From positions 31,062,001 to 31,126,000 of the forward strand of contig NW_027266267.1 in NCBI RefSeq assembly GCF_022045235.1: a DNA stretch of 64,000 nt, given 5' to 3'. The stretch is from Haliotis cracherodii. Its lineage: Eukaryota. The position numbers and the translations under genes are program-made. The notes beneath the pieces were generated by a model. That model did no database searches. It was not told the origin of the DNA and saw nothing but the letters and a program-made list of their open reading frames with translations. Below, one piece after another: positions 13,461 to 60,415 of the stretch; within the stretch, counting starts at the first letter, position 1; every line of letters starts with the position of its first letter.

Positions 13461-13566
13461 TATTATATCCTAGTTATATAACTGTTAGTAACTACAGCTG
13501 CAGCTTGACATTCAGTTGTTCCACAAGGCCAGCTGATGTACAGTGTCCCTCCACAACTAACACTGG

Positions 13567-14843
13567 ATATGATTCTGTTACAGGACTGGTTGTAATACAT
13601 TGTATATGATTCTGTTACAGGACTGGTTGTAATACATTGTATATGATTCTGTTACAGGACTGGTTGTAATACATTGTATATGATTCTGTTACAGGACTGG
13701 TTGTAATACATTGTATATGATTCTGTTACAGGACTGGTTGTAATACATTGTATATGATTCTGTTACAGGACTGGTTGTAATACAATGTATATGATTCTGT
13801 GTTACAGGACTGGTTGTAATACATTGTATATGATTCAGTGTTACATAACTGGTTGTAATACAATGTATATGATTCTGTGTTACAGAACTGGTTGTAATAC
13901 ATTGTATATGATTCTGTGTTACAGGACTGGTTGTAATACAATGTATATGATTCTGTGTTACAGGACTGGTTGTAATACATTGTATATGATTCTGTGTTAC
14001 AGAACTGGTTGTGATACAATGTATATGATTCTGTGTTACAGGACTGGTTGTAATACATTGTATATGATTCTGTGTTACAGAACTGGTTGTAATACAATGT
14101 ATATGATTCTGTGTTACAGGACTGGTTGTAATACATTGTATATCATTCTGTGTTACAGAACTGGTTGTAATACAATGTATATGATTCTGTGTTACAGAAC
14201 TGGTTGTAATACATTGTATATGATTCTGTGTTACAGAACTGGTTGTAATACAATGTATATGATTCTGTGTTACAGAACTGGTTGTAATACATTGTATATG
14301 ATTCTGTGTTACAGGACTGGTTGTAATACATTGTATATGATTCTGTGTTACAGAACTGGTTGTAATACATTGTATATGATTCTGTGTTACAGGACTGGTT
14401 GTAATACAATGTATATGATTCTGTGTTACAGGACTGGTTGTAATACATTGTATATGATTCTGTGTTACAGAACTGGTTGTGATACAATGTATATGATTCT
14501 GTGTTACAGGACTGGTTGTAATACATTGTATATGATTCTGTGTTACAGAACTGGTTGTAATACAATGTATATGATTCTGTGTTACAGGACTGGTTGTAAT
14601 ACATTGTATATGATTCTGTGTTACAGAACTGGTTGTAATACAATGTATATGATTCTGTGTTACAGAACTGGTTGTAATACATTGTATATGATTCTGTGTT
14701 ACAGAACTGGTTGTAATACAATGTATATGATTCTGTGTTACAGAACTGGTTGTAATACATTGTATATGATTCTATGTTACAGGACTGGTTGTAATACATT
14801 GTATATGATTCTGTGTTACAGAACTGGTTGTAATACATTGTAT
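13567..14843. repeat. Minisatellite, 39-bp unit tatgattctgtgttacag(g/a)actggttgtaataca(t/a)tgta (first copies 37 bp)
   Basis: About 33 tandem units, cut at the right end by a LINE insertion. Confidence 0.97.
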
Positions 14844-15599: not shown

Positions 15600-18500
15600 G
15601 CTTTACCCAACACCTGTAGATTTCTCTCCTGGAATATTGGAGGGTTAATAAGTAAACTTAAGGCTAGTGACTTTTGTAGTTTCATATACAACCATGAGGT
15701 CATCTCGATATATGAAACATGGATGTCAGAAATCAGCTTCATTAGCACTCATTTTCCCGACTATAAGATCATTTCTCTACCAGCAAATAAGTTATCTCAG
15801 TATGGTCAATATTCTGGGGGAATACTAGTTTTAGTGTTAAAGCACAATTAGCGAAGTACATTCTTGATGTTAAGGTTGGGGATAATGCAGTAACCGTGTT
15901 GTTTGACAAGGACATATCAAGATGTGACTTAAATGTCTTATGTGTTTTTAGTTACATTCAGCCAGAAGGCTCATCATGGTATGATGACAAAGATAGTCGC
16001 AAGGGTGTAGACTTACTTTTGAACTTATTACTTAGTGTGTTGGAAAAGTATCCAGATGTTTCTATTTTATTGTTCGGGGATTTAAACAGCAAGCTGGCAC
16101 AGAACAAGACTATATCGGAGATGATATCATTCACTATGTGGAAGGGGATGAACATTATACCAACCTGTTAACCAAGTTCGATATGCCACGAATATCTAGC
16201 GACCAGAAGGTGAATACGTTCGGTAGATCTTTCCTGGAAATGTGCTCACTTCTGGACATCCATATTATCAATGGAAGGGTTGGGGCAAACTCCAAGGACT
16301 TCACTTTCATAGGACATCTGGGATGCAGCGTCATAGACTATGGGTTAGCATCAACAGATATATTCCAACATATTGCAGACTTTGACATAATGTCCCACTC
16401 AGAAAGTGACCATTTACCAATCCGTGTGAGCATTCGTCATAAGGGAGATGCGTTTGAACCTGAGAATAGTCAGTTACACTATAAGTACATATGGACTGAT
16501 AAACTTCATGAGACATTCATGATGAATATATCATCGCCATGTATCACTTATATGCTAGAACGTGCAGCTTTATGTTCACTCTCAGATGCATCTACTGCAG
16601 TGACTCTACTGACAGATGCTATTCTGTCTGCCGCTTGTCTGTTCAAAAAGGAGAATAGATGTAAAAGGCATAGTGACTCCCCATGGTATGACAACGAATG
16701 TCTTACTAAAAAACACGAACGCTGTCATGCACTGAACACTTTTCGGGCTACTGAAAGCACTGAACATCTAGCCAAGTACAACAAGGTACGCAATGAGTAC
16801 AGATCTTTGTGTAGGACAAAGGGGGACCAGTATCGACAGCGTAATAGAGTAGAACTGATAAACTCAACTGGTGACTCCAAAAATGTTTTGGGACATTGTC
16901 AAACGTGTGTCTTGGTGTCAACATCATCACAATCCTATCTCCGCGGTAGAGTGGGCCGAATATTTCTCAAGATTATACGCAAATACTGATCCTCTTGACA
17001 TTGACGATAAAAGTCTGTACGTATGTGAATCTCATGAACTGACAGAACACATTCTTGACTGCCCTATAACAAGATCAGAAATCACAGACAGTATTCGTGC
17101 CTTAAAGAACAATAAATCAGCTGGAGTTGACCATATCATAAGCAAATACCTTAAACACTTATCAGATGTTATTTCTCCTTACTTGGAGATTATATTCAAT
17201 AGTATGTATGAAAATGGTGTTTTTCCCGAAAATTGGTCATGAGGAATTATCATTCCATTACATAAGAAAGATGACACAACAGTTCCAGATAACTATCGAG
17301 CTATAAGCCTTCTGAGTGTCCTTAGCAAAGTATTCACTTCAACTCTATACAAGAGATTAGTTTTGTGGACAGACACGCTTTGTGTTATTTCTAAATGCCA
17401 GTCAGGCTTTCGGAAGGGGTATTCCACTGTAGATAACTGTTATGTCCTTAATGCTCTTGTACAAGATTCCTTTCACGTAAAGGGGGTAAGTTTTACGTCG
17501 CTTTTATTGACTTCTCTAGGGCGTTTGATTCCATATACTGTAACCTTCTTTGGAGTTTGATTTATAAACGGGGATTAAGTACAAAAATGGGTAGAATGTT
17601 GCAGTCAATCTACAAGGACATTAAGGCAAGTGTAAGGTCTAACAATCGTATGTCTGAGGCATTCGATTGCCCTTTGGTTGTCAGGCAAGGCTGTGTACTT
17701 AGCCCGTTCTTGTTCCAGTTTTTTATAAATGAAATAGTTCTTGAGATGGAAGAGGAGTGTCCATTTGGTGTACAGCTCCATCCTGACATTATCCACATCC
17801 TGTTAATTCTATTTGCAGATGATTTGATACTCGATGGTGATAGTGTTTCTAACCTTCAGAAGAAACTAAGCGTCCTTGAGAATTTTTGTGACAATCTGAA
17901 AATGTCAGTTAATATGTCCAAGACCAAAGTTGTTGTATCTAAAAATGGTGGTGGTTTGTCACATTTCGATAAATGGTTTTACAAAGGGAAAAGGCTTGCG
18001 GTTATACTTACTTGGGTTTGTATTTTAATAACAGGCTTAACTGGTCTAAAACTCTTGATAAGATTGCCCTGCAGGCGAAAAGGGTATGGATAACTATCCT
18101 CCGAGGCATACATTCGCTACAACCTTTTTCACCAGATTTCTACTTCCAAATTTTCGATGCGAAGATCATGCCAGTGCTACTGTATGGTGCCGAGGTCAGG
18201 GGGTTTGAAAATGTTGACAAATTGGAAACTGTGCAGTTATATGCTAGTAAACGCTTTTTGGGATTAAAATTATCAGCATCAAACAACGCTGTATTGGGTG
18301 AGTGTGGCAGATACCCTATTCATGTATATGCTTTTACCAGATGTCTGAAATATTGGCTGAACATACTAAAGATGCCAGACTTCCGTTTACCAAGAAAGTG
18401 CTACAATATGATGTACCTGTATGATGAACATGGTCGTGTCAATTGGGTAACTAAATTAAGGAATTGTCTTTGTAAACTTGGGTTCGGAGATGAATGGGGG

Positions 18501-18999
18501 TTCCAAATGTATGGAAACCGAAAGGTTTTTCTTAATATGTTTAAACAACATTTGAAAGACAATTTTCAGCAGATCTGGCAAGGCAAACTTCTTGCAATTT
18601 TAAAAATGTCATTTTATGCTTGTTTTTAAACTTATGTTAAATGTGAACCTTATTTGTCATTCTTAAATTCGAAAAATATGAAAACAACCCTCATGAGATT
18701 CAGGCTGAGTTGTCAAACTTTGGAAATTGAGAATGGACTTCATTATAAAATTCCAATGAAATTTAAGAAAATGCAAACTTTGTAAATTAGAGTGTATTGA
18801 AACCGAGTACCACTTCCTGCTTATTTGTCAATCATATGTCAAGTTACAGCAACTATATCTCAAAGCAAAGTTCTATTGTCATCCTAACATTCATAAATTT
18901 AACATGCTTCTGTCATCATCAGATACATATATTATTACAAATCTAGCAAAATATCTATATTATGTAAATGAAGTAAGAAATGCGAAACTGAAAGCTTAA
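15600..18999 (+). pseudogene. LINE ORF2 remnant: apurinic-like endonuclease, reverse transcriptase and C-terminal zinc knuckle, with multiple frameshifts and stops
   Basis: Endonuclease motifs SWNIGG, ETW, GDLN, SVIDY, SDHLP. RT motifs KSAGVD, NYRAISLLS, QSGFRKGYSTVD, FIDFSRAFD, RQGCVLSPFLF, LFADD, YTYLG. C-terminal C..C...ETEYHFLLIC at ~18770-18830. Confidence 0.95.
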
Positions 19000-19100
19000 A
19001 ACCTGTCTGTACTCACCTTTTGTACACAAAGGCCTGTTGTGGCCTATATGTATTGGAAATAAAATGAATGAATGAATACATTGTATATGATTCTGTATAA

Positions 19101-19543
19101 TGTAGCGGCCATAATATTTCCAAGTCCCGTGATGGGATTCAAACCACGGACGTTCTGATCAGAGGTCAGATGCCTTGTCCACATGACCAAAGAGGATAAC
19201 CCCGTCAGCAAGCTGACAAGGTAAGGGTGTCATCTGTGGGATGACTCCACACCCTGCTACATACTCCCCCGTCAACAGAAGGCACGTCCCGGGCTGCATA
19301 GTAAGGTACTGAGGCTTATTTTGCTCAAATTTAATGTGAACATGCTCAGCCCAACGTTGGGCGCCAATGTAGCGGCCATAACATTTCCGAGTCCCGTGAT
19401 GGGATTTGAACCACAGACCTTCTGATCAGAGGTCGGACGCCTTGTCCACATGACCAAAGAGGTTAACCCCATCAGCAAGCTGACAAGGTAAGGATGTCAT
19501 CTGTTGATGACTCCACTCCGTGCTACATACTCCCCTGTCAAAA
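19101..19543 (-). mobile_element. TRIM (miniature non-autonomous LTR retrotransposon) with tRNA-derived sequence in the LTRs (Helenus-like)
   Basis: Direct repeats 19101-19261 and 19368-19527 (~90% identical), each tgtagc...gctaca. On the - strand, PBS tggcgcccaacgttgggc (19349-19366) is complementary to the tRNA-Lys(CTT) 3' end, and PPT gacgggggagta lies at 19262-19273. The non-coding interior is 106 bp. Each LTR holds a tRNA-Arg-like segment. Confidence 0.88.
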
Positions 19544-19745
19544 GATTCTGTGTAACATGACTGGTTGCAGTAATACATTGTATATGATTCTGTGTAACAT
19601 GACTGGTTGCAGTAATACATTGTATATGATTCTGTGTTACATGACTGGTTGCAGTAATACATTGTATATGATTGTGTTATATGACTGGTTGCAGTAATAC
19701 ATTGTCTATGATTGTGTTATATGACTGGATGCAGTAATACATTGT
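19544..19745. repeat. Continuation of the 39-bp minisatellite as a 40-42-bp variant gattctgtgtaacatgactggttgcagtaatacattgtatat
   Basis: About 5 units homologous to the 13567-14843 array, with a 3-bp insertion. Confidence 0.92.
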
Positions 19746-21299
19746 AGATATGTAGTACATTGCATATGATTGAATGGCATGTGTCTGTTTGTATTAATGT
19801 TACATTGTCAGCATTATCTGTAAAACGTCAACATGCTTCTGTTCTGACTGACATAGTAACAATCTTCCAAATATCACTTCTGTTACCTTTTAATTATGGC
19901 ACACTGTAACCAATGATGTTAATTGCTATTATACATTACTAGCTATTCTTTACAGTACTATAAGAATCTACTACAGAGGATCTTCAGGATGGGATAAATA
20001 GCCAATATGAAATAGCTACATCAGAGAATCTAGAAAACTAAAACAACAATGTCTGTGCATAATTCCATTGCTTTACATGCTAGAGACAATAGAATCACAT
20101 CCATAGGGCAAAAATGTATTTTGCAAATAACACCTCCCGCTCAAGTTTGAGCCGTGTCTCAGTGCTTTGATGCTTTTGACAGAATCCTGCTCCTCTCCCC
20201 TGCTCATGAATCTGGCAACACGTCCAACCCATGATCATACAGTAGTCACATCTAAACCAATGCACCAGCAAGTCGACCACTTTGGCAGAAATGTTTGTTT
20301 GGCCATCTCACCTCTCTTCGCAACTATGTACAAAAAAGAGAACGTACAGCCACTGTATTGCTAATATTCTGACAAGAATTCAGTTTCACTGCTTGCATTG
20401 ATTACAAATGTTAGTCATCAAAACAGAAAAAAATAAACGGACTGTGACAGCGTTCAGGCTCATCATAACTAATGCTTTATTAAGCATATTTATGGAATAT
20501 AATCAAAATGGCTGCCAAAGGCGTCTGCCTTCAACAATCACAATGGCTGCCAATGGCAGATGCTGTGAAAAGTTTCAGATGAAAAAACACATGGCTCTAG
20601 TGGTGTGCTCATTTTGTTAGGCAATGATCTTACGAAGTAATTAAACGACAGATCTTTGAAAGTTCGTCCTCACCATCCTGTTCAATATTGTGATTTAGAT
20701 AAATTGAATCTGAGATTTGCAGACTGGCCATATTTAATCGGAAATCTGTCAAATAATTTGAGAAAGGTCATGGTGACCTCGTAAAGTCTTATGGAAGTTG
20801 CACAAAGTAATAGGATTACGATCAAACAATTAGGCAAGCTCATGATTCTTTTAGGAAAGCAAAGATTTATTATAGGTGGCCCCTTGCAGTTTTAAGGAAT
20901 TGTTTAAACTGTTTATATCTGGGGTAATGCAGATTGCGTGAGAAAGATCAGAATCAAAATGGACAGAACCCCTTTAGAAAAGGAAACTCTCTGACATCCT
21001 GTGGCCTAGATAGAAATGTGATTTTCTCATAGAACTCTCATGATTCAAAGTCTATGAGACTAACTGCAGGACAAACAACCAAAATGACAGCTGTAATTAA
21101 AGTCCAAAATAAGATGAATAAATGTAAAACTATATCTGTGAAGACATTTGCCCTAAAATTAGAAAAAGGACTAGAAAACATCATTTTATTAACAAGAAGT
21201 TGTATATACCGCATTGTGTCTACTGGGTAAAAATCTATAAGAAAGTACCGAGAACTTGATTTGTATTACAGACGACAAGTTGGACTATATGACATGAAC

Positions 21300-26337: not shown

Positions 26338-26632
26338 AAATGTTATATTTGGGATAACACTATCTTAGTAAAGTACAGATTCTCATACTTTTTGGGGATT
26401 GAGTCACGTCCAGGATTTGAACCCTCACTGCACCTAATCGCCAGCACACAAAGTCAGCAATCTAACCCACTCACCCATCGAGGCTTCCACAAAATAAAAG
26501 TCTGACAACTAGTGGTCTAGATCACATACTTTGTGTACCCCTCTGACAAGTACAAGTCCCGGACGGGACTCAACCCCAAAAAGTATGAGAATCTGTACTT
26601 TACTAAGAAAGTGTTATCCAAATATAACATTT
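26338..26632. mobile_element. MITE with ~84-bp terminal inverted repeats and an internal tRNA-like cassette
   Basis: 26338-26422 matches the reverse complement of 26550-26632 (aaatgttatatttgg..ataacact.tcttagtaaagtacagattctcatactttttgggg..tgagtc.cgtcc.gga.ttg.ac). The - strand has an A-box-like gggtgagtggg and a B box ggttcaaatcc. Confidence 0.88.
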
Positions 26633-54170: not shown

Positions 54171-56454
54171 CCCAACAGTCATGTTTTCTGCTCAATGCAT
54201 ACTGCTACACACACTATGAAAAATTGTAGGAACCTACAACTCCTTAATCAATAAGCTACAATTATACATGTGAATAATTATTTCAAAATACCTGACCAAA
54301 ATGTACTTTCCTATTACTGTTAATTGTCGGTGATGAAGTTGTCAAATCATTTGCTTCAATCAGTGGCTTTCATTTGGATTTGAAAGCTCTGATTGACAAG
54401 CTAGAATCATTTTTTCCCCCACTGCCACAATGAGAACAGGTTCATCATAACTGCCCAAAAAGGTCAGGGAGTGTTATTCCGGGGTATATCATATCCATCA
54501 TGATCTTCAGCTGCATCCAGTCTCCTACCATCATGGTATTATACAAAACAATTCACTCATAAGTGGTTTCTGAGATGAGAGTAAATAATAAGGACCATGT
54601 ACAGTTCTGGATATGTTGTGGGTACTGCATCTAACGATGCAGTGCTATTGATGACAGAAATGTAGCCTGGAGCTGAGAGCAGCTGATCTTACACTGTTGT
54701 AGCTCTGGTACATCTCTGGGAGAAGTACTTCATACAGATGACACAACTCTTGTCCAGGATCACCACCTCATGATCTGATAACGATATCAACCCTAAACAG
54801 GCCTTGCAGTAGCCCATATAGTAGGATCAAATATAGTTGTGTCCATCTCCAAGGAAGGAAATAATAAAGTTGCCTTCCAATTACTGGTGAGTTGTTTCTG
54901 AGTCCAGCTTTATTGTAGTGTTCATTGCCTGACTAATATGGCTGCCATCTGTCAGTCTCAGCAGCCGGTCTAGTGTAGGGCAGACACACATAAACCCTGC
55001 TTAGTGTTGTAGTAGTGCAATCCTCCTGAATACCACAGCACACCTGTGACATCATGTCTGTGTGATAGACACCGTAAACAAGCCGCTCTATACCCTACCA
55101 GCCATTAACTTGAGACATAAACTGGATTAGGCCACATTCCTCACAGCAATATCACAAAACATCTGAAATATTTTCGACCTTCGGTTATAAATTTGCTGAA
55201 GCAAACTTTCTTCTGAAACATTTGACAATTTGAGTATCCCACTCATCAAACTGGACAACTTTGATTTCCTCAGAGGCAACATGGCTTTTCAATAGCACAT
55301 GATCAAAGAAAACACGGCTGAAAAACATATCCATCGTGCAAAATTTCATGGACACACTTTTTCAAAACCCAAAGGAATATATTTATCACTTGAGATGTTT
55401 CTATCTTTGCATATTTTATTCAAGTTAATTTAAAAAAGTATTTAAAACGAAACTTCTCCAGCTAACTAATATGGCTTCAAGCTATGACAGGATGTGGAAC
55501 TGGCTGTCCACATGAGCTTCCTCCTCTGACAACTGGGCATGTCTCTCATCCACACAATATTACAGTCAACACAGGGTCATGTAGCTCCTCCACAGACACA
55601 GTACTGCACAGGTCTAACGTAATAGAACGGACGACCACTTTTGTATCTAGATCAATCAATACTATCACATCACACTGAAGGAATAAGCCTCTATCATTTC
55701 TTTCAAATAACTTTTTTGTGTAATTATTTTCTCTCAATATTACCAAAATTACAATTTCAACCCACCAAGTTATCCACTCAATTTATCAATTTGCGATTTG
55801 GCCACCATTTCAGACAAGTGGTCTAACCCTGGCTGATCACTCATCGATCATTGGCAAAAGGTTGGTGAAAGCCGACAAGTCTCTTATTTAACATTGATTC
55901 CAGCACATTCCATTCACACGTCCAATGTATCATCGTATTTCACACACTGCCTCCTAATAGCAGCTCTGTCTTTTCAATTTTCAATCACCAGGAACATTTT
56001 GGTAATTTTCCAAGAAAATTACACACAAGCAAAACTGACTTCATCTGTTTCTGACAATAGGGGTTACCAGATGTTTGAAAATCTGATCAGATTACATCGC
56101 AATCGCAGAAAATATCTGTGTACATATTAGCCATGGAAGTAATTAGAGTTGAGAACTTAGGTACATGCAGTAAGTACACACAAGTGTTATTCAAGTTTCT
56201 TGCTATCTGTTAATAATAAGAGCCACAGGTCAGACAATGCCTGTGAACTGTATGGTGCTGACAGCTGTAACCTGGGACAGCCAATAACTTCAGATACATC
56301 ATTCCATCAACCAGAGTCTCACATAAAGGCTTCACAGATATACTTAGTTAATATAGCAAGGCTGACAGCAGACAGGTTCAGTGTCTTGTGTACTGGCACC
56401 TCACACTTTCTCAGTGCCATAAATCAGACACTATCAGAGTTATGTGATTCCTGA

Positions 56455-59400
56455 CTGATGTGATGCAGGACAGAACAGGTCTTACACTGTCAGTGTCTGA
56501 TGTAATAGAGGACAGAACAGGTCTTATACTGTCAGTGTCTGATGTAATAGAGGACAGAACAGGTCTTACATTGTCAGTGTCTGATGTAATAGAGGACAGA
56601 ACAGGTCTTACACTGTCAGTGTCTGATGTAATAGAGGACAGAACAGGTCTTACACTGTCAGTGTCTGATGTAATAGAGGACAGAACAGGTCTTACACTGT
56701 CAGTGTCTGATGTAATAGAGGACAGAACAGGTCTTACACTGTCAGTGTCTGATGTGATAGAGGACAGAACAGGTCTTACATTGTCAGTGTCTGATGTAAT
56801 AGAGGACAGAACAGGTCTTACACTGTCAGTGTCTGATGTGATAGAGGACAGAACAGGTCTTACACTGTCAGTGTCTGATGTAATAGAGGACAGAACAGGT
56901 CTTACACTGTCAGTGTCTGATGTAATAGAGGACAGAGCAGGTCTTACACTGTCAGTGTCTGATGTGATAGAGGACAGAACAGGTCTTACACTGTCAGTGT
57001 CTGATGTAATAGAGGACAAAACAGGTCTTACACTGTCAGTGTCTGATGTAATAGACGACAGAGCAGGTCTTACATTGTCAGTGTCTGATGTAATAGACGA
57101 CAGAACAGGTCTTACATTGTCAGTGTCTGATGTAATAGACGACAGAGCAGGTCTTACATTGTCAGTGTCTGATGTAATAGACGACAGAGCAGGTCTTACA
57201 TTGTCAGTGTCTGATGTAATAGAGGAAAGAAGAGGTCTTACATTGTCAGTGTCTGATGTAATAGAGGAAAGAAGAGGTCTTACATTGTCAGTGTCTGGTG
57301 TAATAGACGACAGAGCAGGTCTTACATTGTCAGTGTCTGATGTAATAGACGACAGAGCAGGTCTTACATTGTCAGTGTCTGATGTAATAGAGGAAAGAAC
57401 AGGTCTTACATTGTCAGTGTCTGATGTAATAGAGGAAAGAAGAGGTCTTACATTGTCAGTGTCTGATGTAATAGACGACAGAGCAGGTCTTTCATTGACA
57501 GTGTCTGATGTAATAGACGACAGAACAGGTCTTACATTGTCAGTGTCTGATGTAATAGAGGAAAGAAGAGGTCTTACATTGTCAGTGTCTGATGTAATAG
57601 ACGACAGAACAGGTCTTACATTGTCAGTGTCTGATGTAATAGACGACAGAGCAGGTCTTACATTGTCAGTGTCTGATGTAATAGACGACAGAACAGGTCT
57701 TACATTGACAGTGTCTGATGTAATAGACGACAGAACAGGTCTTACATTGTCAGTGTCTGATGTAATAGACAACAGAGCAGGTCTTACATTGTCAGTGTCT
57801 GATGTAATAGACAACAGAGCAGGTATTACATTGTCAGTGTCTGATGTAATAGACGACAGAGCAGGTCTTACATTGTCAGTGTCTGATGTAATAGACGAAA
57901 GAACAGGTCTTACATTGACAGTGTCTGATGTAATAGAGGACAGAGCAGGTCTTACAATGTCAGTGTCTGATGTAATAGACAACAGAGCAGGTCTTACATT
58001 GTCAGTGTCTGATGTAATAGACGACAGAACAGATCTTACACTGTCAGTGTCTGATGTAATAGACGACAGAGCAGGTCTTACATTGACAGTGTCTGATGTA
58101 ATAGACGACAGAGCAGGTCTTACACTGTCAGTGTCTGATGTAATAGAGGACAGAGCAGGTCTTACACTGTCAGTGTCTGATGTGATAGAGGACAGAACAG
58201 GTCTTACACTGTCAGTGTCTGATGTAATAGAGGACAAAACAGGTCTTACACTGTCAGTGTCTGATGTAATAGACGACAGAGCAGGTCTTACATTGTCAGT
58301 GTCTGATGTAATAGACGACAGAGCAGGTCTTACATTGTCAGTGTCTGATGTAATAGACGACAGAACAGGTCTTACATTGTCAGTGTCTGATGTAATAGAC
58401 GACAGAGCAGGTCTTACATTGTCAGTGTCTGATGTAATAGACGACAGAGCAGGTCTTACATTGTCAGTGTCTGATGTAATAGAGGAAAGAAGAGGTCTTA
58501 CATTGTCAGTGTCTGATGTAATAGAGGAAAGAAGAGGTCTTACATTGTCAGTGTCTGATGTAATAGACGACAGAGCAGGTCTTACATTGTCAGTGTCTGA
58601 TGTAATAGACGACAGAGCAGGTCTTACATTGTCAGTGTCTGATGTAATAGAGGAAAGAACAGGTCTTACATTGTCAGTGTCTGATGTAATAGAGGAAAGA
58701 AGAGGTCTTACATTGTCAGTGTCTGATGTAATAGACGACAGAGCAGGTCTTTCATTGACAGTGTCTGATGTAATAGACGACAGAACAGGTCTTACATTGT
58801 CAGTGTCTGATGTAATAGAGGAAAGAAGAGGTCTTACATTGTCAGTGTCTGATGTAATAGACGACAGAACAGGTCTTACATTGTCAGTGTCTGATGTAAT
58901 AGACGACAGAGCAGGTCTTACATTGTCAGTGTCTGATGTAATAGACGACAGAGCAGGTCTTACATTGACAGTGTCTGATGTAATAGACGACAGAACAGGT
59001 CTTACATTGTCAGTGTCTGATGTAATAGACAACAGAGCAGGTCTTACATTGTCAGTGTCTGATGTAATAGACAACAGAGCAGGTATTACATTGTCAGTGT
59101 CTGATGTAATAGACGACAGAACAGATCTTACATTGTCAGTGTCTGATGTAATAGACGACAGAACAGGTCTTACATTGTCAGTGTCTGATGTAATAGACAA
59201 CAGAGCAGGTCTTACATTGACAGTGTCTGATGTAATAGAGGACAGAACAGGTCTTACATTGTCAGTGTCTGATGTAATAGACAACAGAGCAGGTATTACA
59301 TTGTCAGTGTCTGATGTAATAGACGACAGAACAGATCTTACATTGTCAGTGTCTGATGTAATAGACGACAGAACAGGTCTTACATTGACAGTGTCTGATG

Positions 59401-60208
59401 TAATAGAGGACAGAGCAGGTCTTACAATGTCAGTGTCTGATGTAATAGACAACAGAGCAGGTCTTACATTGTCAGTGTCTGATGTAATAGACGACAGAAC
59501 AGATCTTACACTGTCAGTGTCTGATGTAATAGAGGACAGAACAGGTCTTACATTGACAGTGTCTGATGTAATAGACGACAGAGCAGGTCTTACATTGTCA
59601 GTGTCTGATGTAATAGACGACAGAACAGATCTTACATTGTCAGTGTCTGATGTAATAGACGACAGAGCAGGTCTTACATTGTCAGTGACTGATTTAATAG
59701 ACGACAGAGCAGGTCTTACATTGACAGTGTCTGATGTAATAGAGGACAGAGCAGGTCTGACATTGACAGTGTCTGATGTAATAGAGGACAGAGCAGGTCT
59801 TACACTGACAATGTCTGATGTAATAGACAACAGAGCAGGTATTACATTGTCAGTGTCTGATGTAATAGACAACAGAGCAGGTCTTACATTGTCAGTGTCT
59901 GATGTAATAGACGACAGAGCAGGTCTTACATTGACAGTGTCTCATGTAATAGAGGACAGAACAGGTCTTACATTGTCAGTGTCTCATGTAATATACGACA
60001 GAACAGGTCTTATATTGACAGTGTCTGATGTGATGCAGGACAGAGGTCTTACATTGTCAGTGTCTCATGTAATAGGCAACAGAACAGGTCTTACATTGTC
60101 AGTGTCTGATGTAATAGACGACAGAACAGGTCTTACATTGACAGTGTCTCATGTAATATACAACAGAACAGGTCTTATATTGACAGTGTCTGATGTGATG
60201 CAGGACAG
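56455..60208. repeat. Minisatellite, 42-bp unit tctgatgtaataga(g/c)gacaga(a/g)caggtcttacattgtcagtg
   Basis: About 89 units in constant register. This is the source of the 1263-aa and 1153-aa ORFs. Confidence 0.98.
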
Positions 60209-60415
60209 AGGCACCAATGGATATGTCACTCTACCCAGTGGCACCAGTTGATATGTCACTCTACCCAGTGGCACCAATGGATATGGCACTGTACCCAGAG
60301 GCACCAATGGATATGTCACTGTACTCAGTGGCACCAATGGATATGTCACTATACTCAGTGGCACCAATGGATATGTCACTGTACCCAGAGGCACCAATGG
60401 ATATGTCACTGTACC
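60209..60415. repeat. Minisatellite, 30-bp unit ggcaccaatggatatgtcactgtacccag(a/t)
   Basis: About 7 units directly abutting the 42-bp array. Confidence 0.95.

What the first reader, a model, noticed from the sequence alone, without database searches (positions are those of the whole stretch)
19101..19543. Miniature LTR retroelement whose LTRs carry a tRNA-Arg-derived Pol III cassette
Seen: two ~160-bp TG...CA direct repeats enclose 106 bp that contain only a tRNA-Lys PBS (17/18 match to TGGCGCCCAACGTGGGGC) and a PPT. On the - strand each LTR reads tggtcatgtggacaaggc(g/a)tc(c/t)gacctctgatcagaa...gtggtt(c/t)(a/g)aatcccatcacggg. This aligns with eukaryotic tRNA-Arg: D-loop/A box, anticodon stem tctga/tcaga with TCT in the loop, and T-loop/B box. 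The LTR also has two short hairpins (gtcagc-aa-gctgac and gtcatc-n4/5-gatgac). Known: Cassandra TRIMs carry 5S rRNA in their LTRs, and tRNA-bearing TRIMs have been named Helenus. Inference: a SINE/LTR hybrid that may be transcribed by Pol III and mobilised by an autonomous Lys-primed LTR element. This family may be uncatalogued.
Basis: partly seen in the sequence, partly recalled or inferred. Interest (0 to 1): 0.8.

Follow-up and report, generated by a model that had tools for sequence, protein, structure and literature searches.

The report
Decayed abalone tRNA-bearing mini-retrotransposon (Helenus)
This is an old, damaged copy of a 428-bp gene-less LTR retrotransposon whose repeats contain a decayed copy of the host's arginine tRNA gene; such elements were named Helenus in 2024, so this is a new family, apparently the first from a snail, of a known kind.

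Summary
Two TG...CA direct repeats (19101-19261 and 19368-19527) enclose a 106-bp interior that holds only a tRNA-Lys primer-binding site and a polypurine tract. The element's sense strand is the minus strand.

The genome (1.18 Gb, almost certainly black abalone) holds at least 1,562 LTRs and 473 interiors of this family. In my sample, 24 of 27 other copies have perfect 4-bp target-site duplications. Many copies have identical LTRs and an 18/18 match to the host tRNA-Lys-CTT.

Sense positions 67-132 of the LTR align to the host's own tRNA-Arg-TCG gene (47 of 66 columns identical, z 8-11), with a perfect box B. It is not a working tRNA. The covariance score is at most 15 bits, position 33 is C, and the stems are mismatched.

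The window copy is old and dead. Its LTRs differ at 15 positions, the PBS matches 17/18, the terminator T-run is lost in both LTRs, and there is no duplication at its ends. Eighteen bases of a second interior follow the second repeat, so it looks like a truncated tandem array inside a minisatellite.

This fits Helenus (Kojima 2024), which in molluscs was reported only from bivalves. Pol III transcription and the autonomous partner remain untested. The scan had already found this family elsewhere in this genome (s1-847032, s1-831976).

The parts
19368..19527 (-). 5' LTR of the element (sense = minus strand), 160 bp, TGTAGC...GCTACA
   Evidence: 95% identical to the LTR of young genomic copies. 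It has 8 private differences from them.
19388..19463 (-). tRNA-Arg-derived module of the 5' LTR (box A, anticodon arm with loop CCTCTGA, box B mutated to GGTTCAAATCC)
   Evidence: Alignment to the host tRNA-Arg-TCG gene gives 47 of 66 columns identical, z 10.4. There is no Rfam tRNA hit at E<=10.
19349..19366 (-). Primer-binding site TGGCGCCCAACGTTGGGC, one T after the 5' LTR
   Evidence: 17/18 match to the complement of the host tRNA-Lys-CTT 3' end plus CCA. Young copies match 18/18. 143 genomic sites keep the LTR end plus a perfect PBS.
19262..19367 (-). Internal domain, 106 bp, non-coding
   Evidence: 94% identical to the interior of young copies, with 6 differences. The longest ATG ORF in a whole young element is 59 aa.
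19262..19273 (-). Polypurine tract region GACGGGGGAGTA abutting the 3' LTR
   Evidence: Sequence read. The same ...GGGGGAGTA end occurs 12 times in the published Helenus sequence file; every displayed passage shows it ending a bivalve interior.
19101..19261 (-). 3' LTR, 161 bp
   Evidence: It has 9 private differences from young LTRs, none shared with the other LTR.
19121..19196 (-). tRNA-Arg-derived module of the 3' LTR. Box A-like TGGTCATGTGG lies at 19179-19189 and box B GGTTTGAATCC (10 of 11) at 19135-19145.
   Evidence: Rfam tRNA hit at 19124-19196, 15.4 bits, E 4.7, gathering score 29. Alignment to host tRNA-Arg-TCG gives 45 of 66 columns identical, z 8.2.
19204..19217 (-). Hairpin 1, GTCAGC-TT-GCTGAC, 9 nt upstream of the tRNA-like part
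   Evidence: Intact in 47 of 62 sampled LTRs. By eye, a hairpin plus a GGGTTAACC leader sits at the same place in bivalve Helenus LTRs.
19229..19245 (-). Hairpin 2, GTCATC-n5-GATGAC, in the U3-like part
   Evidence: Present in 56 of 62 sampled LTRs. Its function is unknown.
19113..19116 (-). Site of the family's only sense-strand T4 run (Pol III terminator-like). Here it is mutated to ATTA; in the other LTR the site (19379-19382) reads GTTA.
   Evidence: 57 of 62 sampled LTRs carry a T4 run at or next to sense LTR 146-149 (54 exactly there), 56 of them as their only T4; 5 have none, including both window LTRs.
19528..19545 (-). Stub of a second internal domain (16 of 18 identical to 19262-19279), remnant of a larger LTR-interior array
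   Evidence: Repeat family D5. Complete 3- and 4-LTR arrays with period 267 exist elsewhere.
19544..19746 (.). 42-bp minisatellite (4.9 copies) into which the element is inserted. The left flank 19073-19100 is a partial unit.
   Evidence: A related 39-bp array lies at 13560-14843. This periodicity explains the apparent 12-bp duplication GATTCTGT(A/G)TAA.

Best explanation
What it is. [quoted passage not shown] It is a 428-bp non-coding element made of two 161-bp LTRs around a 106-bp interior. The interior holds only a tRNA-Lys-CTT primer-binding site and a polypurine tract.

Shown by sequence. The family spreads by the ordinary LTR-retrotransposon cycle. An integrase inserts the copies with 4-bp target duplications at a TG|CWWG|CA-like site. 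LTR-LTR recombination has left solo LTRs, and some loci are LTR-interior arrays. Each LTR carries, at sense positions about 66-141, a decayed copy of a tRNA-Arg-TCG gene. It keeps a perfect box B and a near-consensus box A and is followed 5 nt later by the element's only T4 run.

Inferred. Reverse transcriptase and integrase are supplied in trans by an autonomous, probably Gypsy-type, Lys-primed element. The tRNA-derived module serves as an internal Pol III promoter. In that case the genomic RNA would start just upstream of box A in the 5' LTR, read through the first T4, and end at the T4 of the 3' LTR. The tRNA-like module would then be the R region (U3 about 60 nt, R about 90 nt, U5 12 nt).

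The window copy. It has lost what it would need to move: an exact PBS, the T4 runs, one box B, and its right-hand end.
For: Family size. The first look gave 1,915 candidates, and the 50 full-length copies scored besides the window's own were 91-95% identical to the window copy. A 25-mer from the LTR matches 1,562 sites and a 25-mer from the interior 473 sites, each with up to 2 mismatches and 0 control hits. 143 sites keep the LTR end plus a perfect PBS.

Integrase signature. 24 of 27 independent loci have perfect 4-bp duplications flanking TG...CA. The target-site profile is T(-2) G(-1) | C W W G | C(+1) A(+2), with A at +2 in 21 of 24. Solo LTRs with 4-bp duplications are visible.

Recent activity. 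In 9 of the 27 independent loci sampled all LTRs are identical, and in 9 more they differ at a single position.

Primer. The host tRNA-Lys-CTT gene (array on C2) matches the young PBS 18/18.

tRNA origin. The LTR aligns to the host tRNA-Arg-TCG gene (array on C1) with 45-47 of 66 columns identical and z 8.2-10.6. No shuffle out of 3000 reaches the score, and scores against tRNA-Lys or the antisense strand are at background. Box B GGTTCGAATCC is perfect in 56 of 62 LTRs, and 57 of 62 carry a T4 run at or next to sense 146-149 (54 exactly there). The LTR has no AATAAA, ATTAAA or TATAAA on the sense strand (read from the LTR printed).

Class match. Kojima 2024 (PMC10886601) defines Helenus as TRIMs with a tRNA-like sequence in the LTR. 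Animal families make 4-bp duplications, and bivalve families use tRNA-Lys among other primers.
Against: The tRNA covariance model scores the module below Rfam's gathering score: 15.4 bits against 29, in one window LTR only. A young copy gives no hit at E<=10, and ARAGORN calls nothing.

Box A departs from TRGCY (it reads TGGTC). The T4 run also sits in the 5' LTR, so Pol III would have to read through it to make a full-length RNA.

Three small-RNA runs (about 57 million reads) gave only 11 partial reads, which may come from true tRNA-Arg. There is therefore no evidence of transcription of either kind.

No autonomous partner was found. Of the 11 genomic sites where the perfect PBS is followed by a base other than T, at least three lie next to family LTRs, and the others could not be fetched.

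The window copy itself lacks a target duplication.
Confidence: 0.85

Rival explanations
1. It is an ordinary Pol II-transcribed TRIM. The tRNA-Arg-like stretch would be a passenger, left by a tRNA gene or tRNA-derived SINE that landed in an ancestral LTR. It would play no part in making the genomic RNA, or would serve some other role such as a chromatin boundary or a packaging mimic.
For: A T4 run lies 5 nt after the module in both LTRs, so Pol III starting in the 5' LTR should often stop after about 90 nt. The cloverleaf has decayed. The conserved hairpins lie upstream of the module, where a Pol II promoter could sit. No small RNAs were seen.
Against: Box B is perfect and box A is close to consensus in the active lineage, although the rest of the tRNA structure has decayed. 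The LTR has no TATA box and no poly(A) signal (read). The element has no other sense-strand T4 in 428 bp. The same layout recurs across independent Helenus lineages, and Cassandra is reported to be transcribed from its 5S promoter (PMC10886601).
Confidence: 0.35
2. It is not an LTR element but a tRNA-derived SINE, or a local tandem duplication of one, inserted by LINE machinery. This is suggested by the apparent 12-bp duplication GATTCTGT(A/G)TAA and the ...CAAAA end on the plus strand in the window.
For: The sequence flanking 19101 and 19543. A LINE reverse-transcriptase fragment lies just upstream.
Against: 24 of 27 other copies end exactly at TG...CA with 4-bp duplications and have no A-tail. 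The 12-bp 'duplication' is the periodicity of the 42-bp minisatellite that hosts the insertion. The extra 18 nt are the start of a second interior. A PBS exact to tRNA-Lys and a PPT are present.
Confidence: 0.02
3. The LTRs encode a working tRNA-Arg, so the element multiplies functional tRNA genes.
For: The LTR is similar to the host tRNA-Arg-TCG gene and has a nearby T4 terminator.
Against: Position 33 is C rather than the invariant U, in the loop CCTCTGA. Young copies have a mismatched anticodon stem (TCCGA/TCAGA). Rfam scores 15.4 bits or less and ARAGORN finds nothing. Kojima reaches the same view for most Helenus families.
Confidence: 0.02

Closest known systems
Helenus (TRIMp3) families of pteriomorph bivalves, e.g. 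Helenus-1_CGi, Helenus-2_CVi, Helenus-3_CGi and Helenus-1_PiIm (Kojima 2024, PMC10886601)
   Same: Sizes are similar: published LTRs are 104-193 bp, interiors 87-268 bp and whole elements 325-580 bp, against 161, 106 and 428 bp here. All make 4-bp duplications and have TGT...ACA LTR ends. The PBS starts (t)ttggcgcccaac for tRNA-Lys, and the interior ends ...GGGGGAGTA. By eye, a short hairpin and a GGGTTAACC leader sit directly 5' of the tRNA-like part, and a T4-5 run sits between that part and the LTR end.
   Different: The host is a vetigastropod; Kojima lists molluscan Helenus only from bivalves. The tRNA part is Arg-TCG-like (GGACAAGGCGTC...GATCAGAAG), not the AGCTCAGTNGGTAGAGC type of most bivalve families. 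None of my 9-14-mers from it occur in the published file. The comparison with the published sequences was by eye and by motif look-up only, because paper sequences could not be put into the alignment tools.
LTR-11_DR and related fish Helenus
   Same: High copy number, tandem LTR-interior arrays, a tRNA-like LTR and 4-bp duplications.
   Different: The interior is 43 bp, the LTR sequence is unrelated and the host lineage differs.
Cassandra (plant TRIM with 5S rRNA in the LTR)
   Same: A small-RNA gene with a Pol III promoter and terminator sits inside each LTR. Arrays of about three LTRs are common. The proposed LTR-to-LTR Pol III transcript is the model used here.
   Different: The module is 5S rather than tRNA, the hosts are plants, and the published text I could read quotes an 18-bp terminal redundancy against the roughly 90 nt predicted here.
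tRNA-derived SINEs (SINE2)
   Same: A tRNA-derived internal Pol III promoter, non-autonomous, thousands of short dispersed copies.
   Different: SINEs have no LTRs, PBS or PPT. LINEs insert them with variable duplications and a 3' tail. This family has fixed TG...CA ends and 4-bp duplications.

Membership tests
Helenus (TRIM with tRNA-derived LTR; Kojima 2024) | Short non-coding element with two LTRs flanking an interior that holds only a PBS and a PPT | tested here: met
   LTRs of 161 bp, interior of 106 bp, longest ORF 59 aa, PBS exact to host tRNA-Lys-CTT in young copies, PPT GGGGGAG.
Helenus (TRIM with tRNA-derived LTR; Kojima 2024) | tRNA-like sequence in the LTR | tested here: met
   45-47 of 66 columns identical to the host tRNA-Arg-TCG gene, z 8.2-10.6. 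The covariance model alone is sub-threshold, at 15.4 bits.
Helenus (TRIM with tRNA-derived LTR; Kojima 2024) | Conserved Pol III boxes: box A TRGCY...YGG and box B GGTTC | tested here: inconclusive
   Box B GGTTCGAATCC is perfect in 56 of 62 LTRs. Box A reads TGGTC...TGG, so YGG is met but TRGCY misses by one base. Promoter activity was not tested.
Helenus (TRIM with tRNA-derived LTR; Kojima 2024) | Animal families make 4-bp target-site duplications | tested here: met
   24 of 27 loci have perfect 4-bp duplications. The window copy itself has none.
Helenus (TRIM with tRNA-derived LTR; Kojima 2024) | Mobilised in trans by an autonomous Gypsy element that shares the PBS type | tested here: inconclusive
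   No partner was found in the window or the fetched loci.
TRIMp3 (Pol III-transcribed TRIM) | Genomic RNA made by RNA polymerase III from the LTR's small-RNA promoter | not testable with these tools
   Only small-RNA runs were available as raw reads. They gave 11 partial reads out of about 57 million.
Cassandra / Ajax | 5S rRNA-derived sequence in the LTR | tested here: not met
   The Rfam scan of the region at E<=10 gives no 5S hit. The only small-RNA-gene-like hit is tRNA.
SINE2 | No LTRs; LINE-type insertion with a 3' tail and variable duplications | tested here: not met
   Fixed TG...CA ends, a PBS, a PPT and 4-bp duplications.
Functional tRNA-Arg gene | Cloverleaf that passes tRNA detectors; U33; paired stems | tested here: not met
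   ARAGORN finds none. Rfam scores 15.4 bits or less against a threshold of 29. Position 33 is C and the anticodon stem is mismatched.

The most novel reading that the evidence does not exclude
The tRNA-derived module together with its T4 run may be the R region of a Pol III-made retroelement genome. Pol III would start just upstream of box A, skip its own terminator in the 5' LTR and use the identical one in the 3' LTR. That would be the Pol III counterpart of retroviral poly(A)-site occlusion.

The hairpin and GGGTTAACC leader just upstream are shared by eye with oyster Helenus families. They may be a conserved functional signal of a molluscan Helenus lineage that spans gastropods and bivalves, either through very old descent or through horizontal transfer.
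Probability: 0.25. Interest if true: 0.55.

Novelty: new member of a known kind. Interest (0 to 1): 0.3.

Why it matters
The finding extends Helenus (TRIMp3) elements from bivalves to what is almost certainly a gastropod. The family is very young, with many copies whose LTRs are identical, and both parent genes can be identified in the same genome: tRNA-Arg-TCG for the LTR module and tRNA-Lys-CTT for the primer.

That makes it a practical system for asking whether Pol III can produce an LTR-retroelement genome and how it deals with a terminator present in both LTRs. On the practical side, about 1,500 tRNA-like, box B-bearing LTRs will confuse tRNA and SINE annotation in abalone genomes. They may also act as dispersed TFIIIC sites.

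The window copy itself is a dead relic with no special importance.

Tried and rejected
1. The interior as a complete reverse-copied tRNA-Lys primer. By eye, the interior's plus strand resembles the whole tRNA. After removing the 18-nt PBS, a global alignment to the host gene gives z 1.2 (p 0.14) and a semi-global one z -0.8. I rejected the idea.

2. A 12-bp duplication and an A-tail as a sign of LINE-type insertion. The host minisatellite's periodicity and the stub of a second interior explain both.

3. Covariance-model support from younger copies. A 19-locus Rfam scan and a single young copy gave no tRNA hit on the LTRs. The three tRNA-like hits lie in flanking DNA, not in the element.

4. 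Finding the host tRNA-Arg gene with the LTR's own anticodon-arm pattern returned only family LTRs. A pattern requiring T33 found the true gene array.

5. RNA evidence. No holder of the sequence is on record as RNA. Three raw small-RNA runs gave 0, 11 and 0 reads, all partial, and one possibly-RNA contig set is uninformative.

6. The autonomous partner. I did not try to read the sites by another route. At least three of them lie next to family LTR motifs. Nothing else with this PBS exists in the window or the fetched loci.

7. The ESM Atlas look-up for an organism check was unavailable.

8. Published Helenus sequences were not typed into the alignment tools, so those comparisons are by eye and by short-motif look-up only.

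Full report
**What is in the window**

Reading 18700-19950 and the repeat finder show two direct repeats separated by 267 bp. I set the boundaries against 29 other genomic copies.
- LTR at 19101-19261 (161 bp).
- Interior at 19262-19367 (106 bp).
- LTR at 19368-19527 (160 bp).

Both LTRs run TGTAGC...GCTACA. The element's sense strand is the minus strand. There, the 5' LTR (19527 down to 19368) is followed by one T and then the primer-binding site TGGCGCCCAACGTTGGGC (plus coordinates 19349-19366). The interior ends GACGGGGGAGTA against the 3' LTR. Two or more such hairpins arise in 3.1% of shuffles of the LTR.

**It is a real, dispersed LTR family**

A search of the window's own genome gave 1,915 first-look candidates. 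The 50 full-length copies scored besides the window's own were 91-95% identical to the window copy, and most end exactly at query position 427, the CA of the second LTR.

Of 27 independent loci, 24 have perfect 4-bp target-site duplications flanking TG...CA. The rebuilt empty sites show a near-palindromic preference T G | C W W G | C A, with A at +2 in 21 of 24. That is the signature of an integrase.

Pattern counts give the family size, each with zero hits for the reversed control.
- 1,562 sites match a 25-mer from the LTR with up to 2 mismatches.
- 473 sites match a 25-mer from the interior with up to 2 mismatches.
- 143 sites keep the LTR end plus a perfect PBS.

The 3.3:1 ratio of LTRs to interiors, together with solo LTRs carrying 4-bp duplications, shows LTR-LTR recombination. 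Arrays of three or more LTRs with period 267 occur at 5 of the 27 sampled loci, and 7 arrays appear among the first 100 listed interiors. They are flanked by a single duplication. Their LTRs are identical in one array and differ at up to 10 positions in the others. In 9 of the 27 loci all LTRs are identical, and in 9 more they differ at a single position, so the family was active very recently. The longest ATG ORF in a whole element is 59 aa.

**The host**

The genome has 1,182,234,246 bases in 80 contigs. The published black abalone assembly xgHalCrac1 has 1,182,252,637 bp in 81 scaffolds (PMC9709981). The difference of 18,391 bp and one record would fit a missing organelle record, which is my inference. 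Other notes of this scan also call the genome black abalone. I did not confirm the organism from sequence.

**The primer**

A tandem array of tRNA-Lys-CTT genes lies on contig C2 near 45.99 Mb. The gene's 3' end plus CCA matches the PBS of young copies 18/18 and that of the window copy 17/18.

**The tRNA-like part of the LTR**

ARAGORN finds no tRNA in the window. Rfam's tRNA model gives 15.4 bits (E 4.7, gathering score 29) on one window LTR at 19124-19196 on the minus strand. It gives nothing on the other window LTR or on a young copy.

I then located the host's own tRNA-Arg-TCG genes, an array on C1 near 30.24 Mb. Sense positions 67-132 of the LTR align to that gene with 45-47 of 66 columns identical and z 8.2-10.6. 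None of 3000 shuffles reaches the score. Scores against tRNA-Lys or the antisense strand are at background. The D-arm and anticodon arm (GGACAAGGCGTC.GAC.TC..ATCAGAAG) are Arg-specific.

The module is not a working tRNA. Position 33 is C (loop CCTCTGA), and young copies have a mismatched anticodon stem (TCCGA/TCAGA). What is kept looks like a promoter. Box B GGTTCGAATCC is perfect in 56 of 62 LTRs. Box A reads TGGTCATGTGG, one base off the TRGCY motif.

**A terminator-like run**

In 57 of 62 sampled LTRs a T4 run lies at or next to sense LTR 146-149 (54 exactly there), 5 nt after the tRNA-like part and 12 nt before the LTR end. In 56 of the 57 it is the LTR's only sense-strand T4, and a young interior has none. 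The LTR has no AATAAA, ATTAAA or TATAAA. By eye, most published bivalve Helenus LTRs also have a T4-5 run between the tRNA-like part and the LTR end. The Helenus paper does not discuss terminators in Helenus.

If Pol III makes the genomic RNA, the layout would be U3 of about 60 nt, R of about 90 nt (the tRNA-like module) and U5 of 12 nt. The first T4 would then have to be read through. This is inference. The same T4 is also the best argument for the rival view that Pol II makes the genome and the module is a passenger.

**The state of the window copy**

- Its two LTRs differ at 15 positions. Each has 8-9 private differences from young LTRs and none shared. The source sequence at the time of insertion therefore equalled today's young copies, and the differences are decay in place.
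- With K of about 0.093 and an assumed 2-5 x 10^-9 substitutions per site per year (my assumption, not measured for abalone), the copy is roughly 9-23 million years old.
- The PBS has one change, both T4 runs are lost, and box B is altered in both LTRs (10 of 11 in each).
- The ends show ATAA against TACT, so there is no duplication.
- Instead, 19528-19545 repeats the first 18 nt of the interior (16/18 identical), as in the complete arrays elsewhere. The sequence then runs into a 42-bp minisatellite (19544-19746, 4.9 copies). The left flank is part of a unit of that minisatellite, and a related 39-bp array lies at 13560-14843.

The simplest reading is an insertion into the minisatellite, originally as or later expanded to a 3-LTR array, followed by a deletion with GA microhomology. 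The apparent 12-bp duplication is the minisatellite's own periodicity.

**Comparison with what is known**

Kojima 2024 (PMC10886601) named TRIMs with tRNA-like LTRs Helenus. Animal families make 4-bp duplications and are thought to depend on Gypsy elements. Bivalve families use tRNA-Lys among other primers. In molluscs, only five orders of pteriomorph bivalves are listed.

The abalone family meets the structural definition. It also shares several details with bivalve families: the (t)ttggcgcccaac PBS start, the GGGGGAGTA interior end (12 occurrences in the published sequence file) and TGT...ACA LTR ends.

None of my 9-14-mers from the Arg-like module occur in the published file, so at family level it is undescribed there. 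No paper in the searched library combines Helenus with abalone, Haliotis or gastropod terms. The bivalve 'biv-TRIM' is a different element without a canonical PBS. Tandem arrays are known for Cassandra and LTR-11_DR.

One by-eye observation may be new. Directly 5' of the tRNA-like part, most bivalve Helenus LTRs have a short hairpin whose letters vary but whose pairing is kept (CTAGC..GCTAG, CTAGCCG..CGGCTAG, AATAGTTCAGT..ACTGAGCTATT). It is followed by a leader such as tGGGTTAACC and then CTTTAGCTCA. The abalone LTR has GTCAGC-TT-GCTGAC, then GGGGTTAACC, then TCTTTGGTCA. The 9-mer GGGTTAACC occurs 3 times in the published file. The two occurrences displayed, in Helenus-1_CGi and Helenus-2_CVi, sit at that same place. 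The paper does not mention a hairpin. I could not test this with alignment tools because paper sequences may not be typed into them.

**RNA and other species**

Twenty runs from 10 studies, under 7 coded organism labels, hold 74-96% of the sampled 31-mers of a young copy. Near-identical copies therefore exist beyond this one assembly, but the labels are coded. None of the 20 holders is on record as RNA. Three raw small-RNA runs gave 0, 11 and 0 reads, all partial and all on the palindromic anticodon arm, so they may come from true tRNA-Arg. Expression is untested.

**Limits**

I built no family consensus. The scan had already reported this family elsewhere in the genome (s1-847032, s1-831976, and probably s1-835423 and s1-826386) with the same verdict.

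**Verdict**

The element is a new family, in what is almost certainly a new host class, of a known kind. The window copy is a dead relic. Interest is modest.

Noticed in passing
window 1-64000: The window is packed with minisatellites. TRF lists 44 rows, which collapse to about 27 distinct arrays with periods of 20-150 bp, many with 20-100 copies. This explains the long stop-free ORFs on both strands, for example at 56411-60251. The 39-bp array at 13560-14843 is related to the 42-bp array that hosts the element.
   Followed up: partly
G000:C2:45989462-46015739 and beyond (loci L036-L060): A large head-to-tail array of tRNA-Lys-CTT genes, with period 297 and further on alternating 212 and 297. 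At least 95 copies are listed, and ARAGORN of 6 in one 3-kb locus.
   Followed up: partly
G000:C1:30241993-30279072 and beyond (loci L073-L092): A head-to-tail array of tRNA-Arg-TCG genes with period 307; the pattern matches 419 sites genome-wide. One listed unit has the anticodon TCA, which ARAGORN labels tRNA-SeC; it is an Arg gene with a CpG transition to an opal-reading anticodon.
   Followed up: partly
window 16138-19100: A LINE fragment lies just upstream of the element on the plus strand. The ORF at 17557-18093 hits RVT_1 (E 5e-17), and the fragment ends in an (ATGA)n tail at about 19064-19078.
   Followed up: no
published Helenus LTRs (PMC10886601 DataS1) against window 19204-19217: By eye, a hairpin with variable letters but kept pairing, followed by a GGGTTAACC-type leader, sits directly upstream of the tRNA-like part in most bivalve Helenus LTRs and in the abalone LTR. 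A T4-5 run follows the tRNA-like part in most of them. Neither feature is discussed in the paper.
   Followed up: partly
L033 near 1518 (G000:C1:34657209-34660224): A rearranged copy of the family in which the PBS is followed directly by antisense LTR sequence, an inverted junction.
   Followed up: no
L005:3021-3092, L017:2993-3049, L004:1076-1134: Near-threshold Rfam tRNA hits (26-28 bits) lie in the DNA flanking three copies of the family. They are unrelated to the element and are probably other tRNA-derived repeats or pseudogenes.
   Followed up: no
window 26338-26632: Another first-stage note (s1-826426) reports a long-TIR MITE with a tRNA-like promoter here. A BLAST of a young LTR and interior against the whole window found no similarity outside 19101-19527.
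   Followed up: partly
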